DNA of 63,865 nt, taken from Glycera tridactyla (Eukaryota). Position 1 is the first letter of the stretch. Every line of letters begins with the position of its first letter. Of this stretch, positions 27,296 through 27,635 are shown one piece after another. A program made the translations under genes and the position numbers. A model generated the notes under the pieces. The model worked only from the letters and a program-made list of their open reading frames with translations, ran no database searches and was not told where the DNA came from. Location of the stretch: NCBI GenBank assembly GCA_965644265.1, contig OZ286462.1, forward strand, positions 117,056,136 through 117,120,000, given 5' to 3'.

Positions 27296-27433
27296 CCGTT
27301 TTGTATGACTCTTTACACCTAGTCGTCGAGCACGATTCTAGATTAAATTGGGGGAGGAATAATTGTTTCTTATCCATATCCACTGCATCCTGGTCCTCCC
27401 ATTCAAGTAGAAGTTCAGTTTCGGGATAGGCAT
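27296..27433 (-). CDS. Cys-loop anion channel subunit, alternative exon 6b
   Basis: TTGTTGTTGCAG|...|GTAAGG, 138 nt, phase 1 to 1. Reads (Y)AYPETELLLEWEDQDAVDMDKKQLFLPQFNLESCSTTRCKESYKT(G). Confidence 0.9.
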
Positions 27434-27491
27434 CTGCAACAACAAGCGAATTCTAGAATTGTTTGGGATTGTGCGAGTGAGGACTGCTTAC

Positions 27492-27635
27492 CTGGGTCAT
27501 TTCTGAGCTGATTTTCACACTCATTGGCAGAGCAGGATTCCAAAGTAAACTGTGGTAGGTAGAGTTCATGTTGGTGCATTTCAATTGGTGTGACCGAGTC
27601 CCACTGTAGTACCAAGTCCTTCATTGTATATGCAA
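27492..27635 (-). CDS. Cys-loop anion channel subunit, alternative exon 6a (loop B end, loops F and C)
   Basis: TTTTCCATTCCAG|...|GTAAGC, 144 nt, phase 1 to 1. Reads (F)AYTMKDLVLQWDSVTPIEMHQHELYLPQFTLESCSANECENQLRNDP(G). Confidence 0.88.

What the first reader, a model, noticed from the sequence alone, without database searches (positions are those of the whole stretch)
27296..27635. Duplicated exon 6 (6a/6b) swaps loops F and C and flips the loop-B aromatic between Phe and Tyr through a split codon
Seen in sequence: two paralogous exons (144 and 138 nt, both phase 1-1, both with strong splice sites) are separated by a 58-nt intron, whereas every other intron in the gene is at least 576 nt. 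Exon 5 ends in a lone T, so 6a completes TTT (SSFAY) and 6b completes TAT (SSYAY). Loop C is ECENQLRNDPG in 6a (2 aa longer, no Tyr or Thr) and RCKESYKTG in 6b (keeps the GlyR-like Y-x-T-G). Established knowledge: this position corresponds to GlyR alpha1 F159, where F-to-Y increases responses to beta-alanine and GABA; GABA-rho and GluCl carry Tyr; insect Rdl has mutually exclusive exon-6 variants. Inference: one gene makes two subunits with different agonist sites, and the very short intron may sterically enforce mutual exclusion.
Basis: partly seen in the sequence, partly recalled or inferred. Interest (0 to 1): 0.88.

Follow-up and report, generated by a model that had tools for sequence, protein, structure and literature searches.

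The report
Either/or ligand-site exons in chloride-channel gene
A glycine-receptor-like chloride-channel gene of a probable annelid carries two old, intact tandem copies of the exon for much of its transmitter-binding pocket, so it probably makes two receptor subunits with different pockets, as the insect GABA receptor Rdl does; RNA proof is missing.

Summary
On the minus strand, exon 6a (27635-27492, 144 nt) and exon 6b (27433-27296, 138 nt) are both phase 1-1, have AG/GTAAG splice sites and lie 58 nt apart. All other introns are 576-5203 nt.

Exon 5 ends in a lone T, so the junction codon is TTT (Phe) with 6a and TAT (Tyr) with 6b. PDB alignment places this residue at GlyR alpha1 F159.

The copies are true but old paralogues: 38% amino-acid identity and near-saturated third codon positions. 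Both score about 52 bits against a family profile of this exon slot, within the range of real members. Neither is decaying.

6b keeps the GlyR loop-C Y-x-T-G. 6a lacks it and is 2 residues longer.

Mutually exclusive use is the best reading (about 0.7) but is unproven: no RNA data and no orthologue DNA were reachable. Steric enforcement by the 58-nt intron is plausible, not shown.

A caveat for this finding: the 6a acceptor is the last of nine tandem copies (27577-28574), which the scan noted separately.

This is a new member of a known kind (Rdl exon 6a/6b). Scan notes report similar exon duplications in other genes of this genome. Interest is moderate.

The parts
27492..27635 (-). Exon 6a, 144 nt, phase 1-1. 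Encodes the end of loop B (completes TTT = Phe at the GlyR F159 position), loop F, and a loop C that is 2 residues longer and lacks the Tyr and Thr (C-ENQLRNDPG).
   Evidence: Aligned to GlyR alpha3 161-190. Family-profile score 52.5 bits.
27434..27491 (-). 58-nt spacer intron between 6a and 6b (gtaagc...ttgcag). No significant RNA structure.
   Evidence: Fold z-score +1.6.
27477..27481 (-). CUCAC, the only yUnAy branch-point-like motif upstream of the 6b acceptor. Its branch A (27478) is 14 nt from the 6a donor and 45 nt from exon 6b. This is a candidate only.
   Evidence: motif scan of all acceptors in the gene.
27296..27433 (-). Exon 6b, 138 nt (the canonical length of this exon slot), phase 1-1. 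Completes TAT = Tyr at position 159, has an acidic loop F and a GlyR-type loop C (C-KESYKTG).
   Evidence: Aligned to GlyR alpha1 161-203. Family-profile score 51.5 bits.
30184..30266 (-). Exon 5, 83 nt, the Cys-loop exon (C-x13-C). Ends in the lone T that starts the split codon. Encodes ...KISS, so there is Ser at the GlyR E157 position.
21822..22092 (-). Exon 7, 271 nt. Begins GC (completes Gly) then KFSC, supplying the constant end of loop C (the Phe at the F207 position and the second Cys). Also encodes M1-M3 with the PAR motif.
   Evidence: Pfam PF02932. Best PDB matches are GlyR alpha.
27577..28574 (-). 112-bp x 8.9 tandem array (97% matches). Each unit is 53 nt of intron with the 6a acceptor plus the first 59 nt of 6a. 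The real exon 6a is the last unit. The eight upstream copies are decoy acceptors that run into a stop.
36083..36186 (-). Exon 1 (ATG, signal peptide).
35415..35506 (-). Exon 2.
32795..32862 (-). Exon 3, 68 nt (GDPVTIYCDIFVSSFGSINAKDM).
   Evidence: tblastn with homologues; sequence read.
31110..31330 (-). Exon 4, 221 nt (loops D, A and E; R65, F99/F100 and S129 equivalents kept).
   Evidence: Pfam PF02931. PDB alignment.
21131..21239 (-). Exon 8 (end of M3, start of the intracellular loop).
17411..17641 (-). Exon 9 (intracellular loop, M4, stop codon).

Best explanation
Exons 6a and 6b are an old tandem duplication of the 138-nt 'exon 6' slot of a complete, intact GlyR-like anion-selective Cys-loop receptor gene (440 or 438 aa). 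They are most likely used as mutually exclusive alternatives.

Exon 5 donates the T of a split codon. Joining 6a gives Phe and joining 6b gives Tyr at the loop-B cation-pi position (GlyR F159). The chosen exon also supplies loop F on the complementary face and most of loop C on the principal face.

6b gives a near-canonical GlyR aromatic box (Y159, Y161, Y202, T204, plus the constant F207). 6a keeps F159 and Y161 but has a longer loop C with no aromatic and no Thr, and a His-rich loop F. The two subunits should therefore differ in agonist recognition or efficacy, or in whether their principal face binds agonist at all.

Both exons are multiples of 3, so exclusivity has to be set at splicing. 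The simplest route is that a U1-bound 6a donor blocks use of the 6b branch site 14-40 nt downstream. Exon 6b would then be used only when 6a is not recognised.

Shown: the anatomy, the paralogy, the intactness of both copies and the residue mapping. Inferred: the either/or usage, the steric mechanism and the pharmacological difference.
For: - Anatomy and split codon.
- The whole CDS is open with either exon.
- Old duplication with both copies constrained: 38% amino-acid and 55% nucleotide identity. Codon-position identity is 0.53/0.70/0.40. Only 8 of 18 identical residues share a codon.
- Both copies score like real members against a profile of this slot built from 36 homologues with ours left out: 52.5 and 51.5 bits. 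Members score 45-82 and shuffles under 10.
- Both keep the family-invariant A/G-Y, W, LPQF and the loop-C Cys, and they share a private LESCS motif.
- The copies diverged in complementary parts. 6a is more GlyR-like in beta8 (YTMxDL) and 6b in loop C.
- Residue mapping to GlyR alpha Y161-N203.
- Co-inclusion and double skipping stay in frame, so NMD cannot enforce the choice. Retention of the spacer gives a stop.
- The spacer is 10 times shorter than any other intron, and its only yUnAy motif is 14 nt from the 6a donor.
- Precedents: Rdl exon 6a/6b, with all splice combinations transcribed in Tribolium by RT-PCR and alternative splicing of Drosophila RDL changing GABA affinity (PMC2064938). 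3n ME exons paired with too-short introns in C. elegans (PMC4165533). A donor-to-branch-point distance under 50 bp as the human steric criterion (PMC5740500).
Against: - There is no transcript evidence of any kind.
- No orthologous locus could be read. The one close relative (P0019/P0262, 85% identity in M1-M3) comes from an ENA assembly whose DNA the tool could not serve.
- The exon-6 ORF searches and a metagenome scan were blank.
- Three more distant homologues have a single exon 6, so conservation of the pair is untested.
- 58 nt is not universally too short. A flatworm has an intron-length mode at about 58 bp (PMC4040987).
- yUnAy is a weak predictor of branch points.
- The 6a acceptor is preceded by eight near-identical decoy acceptors, which could make the 6a route inefficient.
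Confidence: 0.68

Rival explanations
1. Only 6b is functional. 6a is a duplicated exon that is rarely or never productively spliced. It has lost the loop-C Tyr/Thr and is now buried behind an array of decoy acceptors.
For: 6b has the canonical 138-nt length and the Y-x-T-G loop C, like the nearest full-length homologue P0035. 6a lacks both. Eight decoy copies of the 6a acceptor lead into a stop.
Against: 6a is open and keeps its splice sites, phase, both structural Cys, W and LPQF. It scores as high as 6b against the family profile. After a divergence that nearly saturated third codon positions, an unconstrained exon should have decayed. The array copies are 97% alike, so the array is recent and says little about the exon's long history.
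Confidence: 0.12
2. The exons really are mutually exclusive, but the choice is not steric. The 58-nt intron is spliceable in this species, and the choice is made by regulated repression or activation or by splice-site competition. The short spacer is only a relic of a duplication unit of about 200 bp.
For: 58-bp introns are a normal class in some lophotrochozoans (PMC4040987). The proven steric cases in C. elegans are 14-30 nt (PMC4165533). No consensus branch point is established for this taxon. The locus is prone to small tandem duplications, which explains a short spacer without invoking selection.
Against: Every possible branch A in the spacer is 40 nt or less from the 6a donor, and the only yUnAy is at 14 nt. 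Both exons are 3n, the class that relies on short introns in C. elegans (PMC4165533). No competing RNA structure was found in the spacer.
Confidence: 0.3
3. Both exons are spliced into the same mRNA (the 58-nt intron is removed), giving a 486-residue protein with a duplicated beta8-beta10 segment.
For: Co-inclusion keeps the reading frame, and both exons have good splice sites.
Against: A duplicated loop B/F/C segment has no place in the conserved pLGIC beta-sandwich, and none of the credible homologues aligned has it. The one model that does (P0049) repeats an identical exon and looks like an artefact.
Confidence: 0.05

Closest known systems
Insect GABA receptor RDL, alternative exons 6a/6b (formerly c/d)
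   Same: An anion-selective Cys-loop subunit with tandem duplicated alternatives for the exon numbered 6, which encodes the loop F / loop C region of the ligand-binding domain. All splice combinations are transcribed in Tribolium, and alternative splicing of Drosophila RDL alters GABA affinity (PMC2064938, PMC4019635).
   Different: The RDL variants differ at a minority of residues, mostly near loop F. Here 62% of residues differ. The loop-C aromatic and Thr are present in one copy only, loop C differs in length, and the loop-B cation-pi aromatic is toggled through the split codon. The gene is GlyR-like rather than Rdl-like, the taxon is different (probable annelid), and usage has no RNA support. 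Exact positional homology of the RDL exon was not tested here.
Steric-interference mutually exclusive exons (alpha-tropomyosin exons 2/3; C. elegans egl-15 5A/5B, let-2 9/10, bet-2, gly-5, gly-6)
   Same: Homologous 3n-length exon pairs separated by an intron in which the donor-to-branch-point distance is too short for spliceosome assembly (PMC4165533; criterion of under 50 bp in PMC5740500).
   Different: The 58-nt spacer is longer than the proven worm cases (14-30 nt). The minimum intron size and the branch-point rules of this species are unknown, so membership of this class is only possible.
Vertebrate glycine receptor alpha subunits (solved structures, e.g. 8dn2, 5tin, 6plr)
   Same: They are the best PDB match for every exon tested. 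The 68/221/83/138-nt exon pattern matches that of the invertebrate homologues read here and, from my own knowledge, the vertebrate GlyR/GABA-A gene pattern (not checked here). Also shared: Cys-loop, loop-C disulfide, PAR motif, R65, F99/F100, S129 and F207 equivalents.
   Different: About 40% identity overall to cluster representatives. E157 is Ser and G160 is Ala, a GluCl-like S-Y-A-Y loop B with 6b. The agonist is unknown.
Other tandem alternative exons in Cys-loop receptor genes (insect nAChR alpha4 exon 4/4', alpha6 exons 3 and 8, GluCl exon 3; vertebrate GLRA2 exon 3A/3B from my own knowledge)
   Same: The same evolutionary route: tandem exon duplication followed by alternative use, diversifying one subunit gene (PMC2064938).
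   Different: Different exon slots, and much smaller sequence differences between the alternatives.

Membership tests
[quoted passage not shown] | Neur_chan_LBD and Neur_chan_memb domains | tested here: met
   Pfam PF02931 on exon 4 (E = 1.7e-14) and PF02932 on exon 7 (E = 8.7e-22).
[quoted passage not shown] | Cys-loop with 13 residues between the cysteines | tested here: met
   C-PMKLTYFPMDYQI-C in exon 5.
[quoted passage not shown] | P-A-R motif before M2 (anion selectivity) | tested here: met
   ...NAVPARITLGVTTVLTM... in exon 7. PAR is cited as the anion-channel motif in PMC2064938.
[quoted passage not shown] | Second disulfide pair in loop C (GlyR/GluCl type) | tested here: met
   6b: C-KESYKTGKFS-C, 10 residues between the cysteines, as in GlyR alpha1 C198-C209. 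6a: C-ENQLRNDPGKFS-C, 12 residues between. Disulfide formation itself was not tested.
Glycine-gated receptor (GlyR alpha type agonist site) | Loop D Arg (R65) and loop A F99/F100 | tested here: met
   YFRQRW and DVFFPNEK align to FLRQKW and DLFFANEK of GlyR alpha3.
Glycine-gated receptor (GlyR alpha type agonist site) | Loop B E157 (contacts the agonist amine) | tested here: not met
   K-I-S-S-[F/Y] aligns to Q-L-E-S-F, so there is Ser at position 157 in the constant exon 5. The role of E157 is from my own knowledge.
Glycine-gated receptor (GlyR alpha type agonist site) | Loop B aromatic F159 (cation-pi) | tested here: met
   Phe with 6a and Tyr with 6b. Role given in PMC6130964.
Glycine-gated receptor (GlyR alpha type agonist site) | Loop C Y202 and T204 | tested here: inconclusive
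   Present in 6b (S-Y-K-T-G). Absent in 6a (Q-L-R-N-D-P-G).
Mutually exclusive exon pair | Adjacent homologous exons of the same phase and similar length, each with its own splice sites | tested here: met
Mutually exclusive exon pair | Exactly one of the two exons in each mature mRNA | not testable with these tools
   No transcript data for this genome were reachable. The searches of the protein collection found no product of this gene.
Mutually exclusive exon pair | Both exons maintained by selection | tested here: met
   Within one genome: near-saturated silent sites with both ORFs intact and family-typical. Conservation across species could not be tested.
Steric-interference class of mutually exclusive exons | Donor-to-branch-point distance of the intervening intron below the spliceosome's minimum | tested here: inconclusive
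   The intron is 58 nt. The only yUnAy is 14 nt from the donor, and any other branch A is 40 nt or less away. The species' minimum intron length is unknown, and 58-bp introns are spliced in a flatworm (PMC4040987).
Steric-interference class of mutually exclusive exons | Exon lengths that are multiples of 3, so NMD cannot enforce exclusivity | tested here: met
   144 and 138 nt. Co-inclusion and double skipping stay in frame. The same pattern holds for the five C. elegans clusters in PMC4165533.

The most novel reading that the evidence does not exclude
One gene encodes both an agonist-binding 'alpha-like' subunit and a subunit whose principal face cannot bind the same agonist, or binds a different one. 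The first is 6b, with a full aromatic box. The second is 6a, with no loop-C aromatic or Thr and a His-rich loop F. Splicing would then either switch the transmitter specificity of the channel or allow heteromeric receptors with non-equivalent interfaces to be built from a single gene. The either/or choice would be hard-wired by a branch site placed 14 nt from the upstream donor.
Probability: 0.2. Interest if true: 0.75.

Novelty: new member of a known kind. Interest (0 to 1): 0.45.

Why it matters
If both isoforms are made, this is a natural experiment on the Cys-loop receptor agonist site. Loops D, A and E, the pore and the intracellular loop stay the same. The loop-B cation-pi aromatic (Phe or Tyr), loop F and loop C are exchanged as one cassette.

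The difference between the alternatives is far deeper than in the classic Rdl case. Expressing the two cDNAs would directly test how much of agonist selectivity resides in this one exon.

It would also add a lophotrochozoan example to the recurrent, convergent use of tandem exon duplication in ion-channel genes. It offers a compact candidate for steric enforcement: two 3n exons 58 nt apart.

As it stands this is a sound genomic prediction, not a demonstrated splicing switch. The scan's own notes suggest such exon duplications are common in this genome.

Tried and rejected
1. Conservation of the pair in relatives.
   - The ORFs containing 6a and 6b were searched in the 5.8-billion-protein collection. 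Both searches were blank.
   - An alignment of 6a and 6b was scanned against JGI metagenome contigs. No relative was found.
   - The only close relative (P0019/P0262, 85% identity in M1-M3, ENA ERZ26052378) has an LBD-bearing ORF 6-7 kb upstream of exon 7 on both contigs, but no DNA could be served.

2. More distant homologues with DNA (L001; L002 = P0035's gene; L003 = P0034's gene) have a single, 6b-like exon 6. The duplication is therefore not family-wide.

3. A third exon-6 copy in the window. tblastn found none apart from the partial 6a copies of the array. The in-frame stretch just upstream of exon 7 (FRLEPSISECTEVLHN) looked like the 3' half of exon 6, but it is not significant: p is about 0.06 both by shuffles and against other intronic segments. 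Rejected.

4. RNA structure in and around the spacer as a selector mechanism. The fold is no better than shuffles, z = +1.6.

5. Minimum intron length of the species. The window holds no second gene, only a LINE reverse transcriptase. The scan's notes gave nothing on this.

6. Structure prediction of the two isoforms was not run. A spliced protein has no single reference, and I did not paste long sequences.

7. My first regex search for exon 3 failed because of a greedy match. tblastn then found it.

Full report
**What is there.** The window carries one complete Cys-loop receptor gene on the minus strand. I rebuilt it from stop-free segments, splice sites and tblastn with homologues.

| Exon | Coordinates | Length / content |
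|---|---|---|
| 1 | 36186-36083 | ATG, signal peptide |
| 2 | 35506-35415 | |
| 3 | 32862-32795 | 68 nt |
| 4 | 31330-31110 | 221 nt |
| 5 | 30266-30184 | 83 nt |
| 6a | 27635-27492 | 144 nt |
| 6b | 27433-27296 | 138 nt |
| 7 | 22092-21822 | M1-M3 |
| 8 | 21239-21131 | |
| 9 | 17641-17411 | M4 and stop |

The 68/221/83/138-nt pattern and the intron phases match those in the homologous genes I could read (L002, L003). With either exon 6 the reading frame is open from ATG to stop, giving 440 aa with 6a and 438 aa with 6b.

Pfam finds Neur_chan_LBD and Neur_chan_memb. The Cys-loop has 13 residues between its cysteines, and M2 is preceded by P-A-R. The best solved relatives for every exon tested are glycine receptor alpha subunits.

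The nearest full-length cluster representatives are only about 40% identical. The nearest named fragments are from tubeworms. That fits earlier scan notes calling this genome a probable annelid, which I did not test further.

**The observation.**
- Both exons are phase 1-1 and multiples of three.
- Each has a pyrimidine-rich acceptor ending in cag and a GTAAG donor.
- They are 58 nt apart.
- The other eight introns measure 576 to 5203 nt.
- Exon 5 ends ...AGC T. The junction codon is therefore TTT (Phe, SSFAY) with 6a and TAT (Tyr, SSYAY) with 6b.

phmmer against PDB aligns both exon peptides to GlyR alpha1/alpha3 starting at Y161. This puts the split codon at position 159. That is the loop-B residue which makes the cation-pi contact with glycine, beta-alanine and taurine (PMC6130964).

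By the same alignment the exon also supplies loop F and loop C up to G205. The constant exon 7 adds K-F-S-C, which holds the F207 equivalent and the second loop-C cysteine. 6b has C-KESYKTG, matching the GlyR C-TKHYNTG. 6a has C-ENQLRNDPG, two residues longer, with no Tyr and no Thr.

**Are both copies real exons?** The two peptides are homologous far beyond chance (z = 20.7 against shuffles) but only 38% identical.

At the DNA level, identity by codon position is 0.53, 0.70 and 0.40. Only 8 of the 18 identical residues use the same codon. Silent sites are therefore close to saturation, while structural positions have been kept.

I built a profile of this exon slot from 36 homologues, leaving both window exons out. 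6a scores 52.5 bits and 6b 51.5 bits. Real members score 45-82, and 400 shuffles stay below 10.

Each copy is about as far from the other as from vertebrate GlyR exon 6. Yet they share a private LESCS motif, which marks them as sisters.

They diverged in complementary parts. 6a is more GlyR-like in beta8 (YTMxDL), and 6b is more GlyR-like in loop C. An exon free of selection for this long would not look like this. Both have been maintained, and the simplest reason is that both are used.

**How the choice would work.** Including both exons or skipping both leaves the frame intact. Only retention of the spacer gives a stop. Nonsense-mediated decay therefore cannot enforce an either/or outcome, so it must be set at splicing.

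This is the situation described for C. elegans. There the mutually exclusive clusters with too-short intervening introns all have 3n exons (PMC4165533). In humans a donor-to-branch-point distance under 50 bp is used as the steric criterion (PMC5740500).

In the 58-nt spacer any branch adenosine lies at most about 40 nt from the 6a donor. The only yUnAy motif (CUCAC, branch A at 27478) is 14 nt from that donor and 45 nt from exon 6b. Similar motifs sit 8-57 nt upstream of the gene's other acceptors, and 45 nt lies within that spread. If that site serves 6b, U1 on the 6a donor and U2 on the 6b branch site cannot coexist. Exon 6b would then be used only when 6a is not recognised.

This part is inference, for three reasons.
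- The motif is a weak predictor of branch points.
- The species' minimum intron length is unknown, because the window holds no other gene.
- Introns of about 58 bp are a normal class in at least one lophotrochozoan (PMC4040987).

The spacer RNA shows no special structure. The short spacer may simply be a relic of a duplication unit of roughly 200 bp. That would fit a locus visibly prone to small tandem duplications.

**Caveats.**
- I found no RNA evidence. I also could not read an orthologous locus. Three distant homologues have a single, 6b-like exon 6.
- The 6a acceptor with the first 59 nt of the exon is the last of nine 112-bp tandem units at 27577-28574, 97% alike. The eight upstream copies are decoy acceptors that read into a stop. 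It is recent, and it could lower the yield of the 6a route, but it does not change the long-term picture.
- The constant exon 5 has Ser at the E157 position and Ala at G160. With 6b this gives a GluCl-like S-Y-A-Y loop B. The receptor should not be called glycine-gated, and the agonists of both isoforms are open.

**Comparison and verdict.** The closest precedent is insect Rdl. Its alternative exons 6a/6b change residues near loops F and C, and alternative splicing of Drosophila RDL alters GABA affinity (PMC2064938, PMC4019635). Tandem alternative exons are also known in insect nAChR and GluCl genes (PMC2064938). One homologue fetched here (L003) has a duplicated Cys-loop exon.

The present pair is a new member of that kind. 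It is distinguished by three things: the depth of divergence, the loss of the loop-C aromatic in one copy, and the Phe/Tyr toggle through the split codon. Scan notes report similar exon duplications in other genes of this genome, including GlyR-like ones. I did not check those.

I put mutually exclusive use at about 0.7. Within that, the steric and non-steric mechanisms are roughly even. Interest is moderate. It is a clean, testable prediction with a good pharmacological handle, but it is not a new principle and has no expression data.

Noticed in passing
window 27577-28574 (minus-strand gene): A 112-bp x 8.9 tandem array, 97% matches. Each unit is 53 nt of intron with the 6a acceptor plus the first 59 nt of exon 6a. 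The eight upstream units read F-A-Y-T-M-K-D-L-V-L-Q-W-D-S-V-T-P-I-E-M-L-S-Q-C-C-R-D-T-S-F-I-L-stop and also contain an ATT|GTGAGT donor-like site. Copies differ at a few positions, for example GCT versus GCA for Ala.
   Followed up: partly
window 31647-31959: A 116-bp x 2.7 tandem array (78% matches) just upstream of exon 4. It carries diverged copies of the start of exon 4; FRQRWHD is found again at 31863-31843.
   Followed up: no
window 30184-30266 (exon 5): The constant loop-B segment reads K-I-S-S where GlyR has Q-L-E-S, so the amine-contacting Glu (E157) is replaced by Ser. With 6b the loop reads S-S-Y-A-Y, like the A-S-Y-A-Y of the GluCl-like homologues in the alignment. The nearest full-length homologue, P0035, also lacks the Glu (K-I-S-T-Y).
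   Followed up: partly
L003 9355-9438 and 9983-10090: The gene of homologue P0034 (NCBI GCA_910592395.2) has two tandem copies of the 83-nt Cys-loop exon, about 68% identical at protein level. The annotated protein uses the second. This looks like another candidate alternative-exon pair in a GlyR-like gene of a different animal.
   Followed up: no
protein P0049 (cluster representative, vertebrate GlyR-alpha-like): This gene model contains the exon-6 peptide twice in tandem with identical sequence. It is probably an assembly or annotation artefact rather than a real co-inclusion.
   Followed up: no
window 50479-51882 (+): A 467-aa ORF with a reverse-transcriptase domain (Pfam RVT_1, E = 2.5e-34), so a retroelement downstream of the receptor gene's 5' end. 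The stretch 35753-36091 (minus) in intron 1 also looks like the tail of a retroelement ORF (LHWLPV...), but it has no Pfam hit.
   Followed up: partly
window 10169-10297 and 34297-34446 (minus-strand frames): Two copies of a dispersed repeat whose translation shares ...GGLYREVVF.ERSFTVENT..VAAQGGL.REVVF.... One copy lies inside intron 2 of the receptor gene.
   Followed up: no
window 22094-22174: The intron sequence directly upstream of exon 7 is open in the exon-7 frame and faintly resembles the 3' half of exon 6 (FRLEPSISECTEVLHN against FTLESCSANECENQLRN). The similarity is not significant (p about 0.06).
   Followed up: yes
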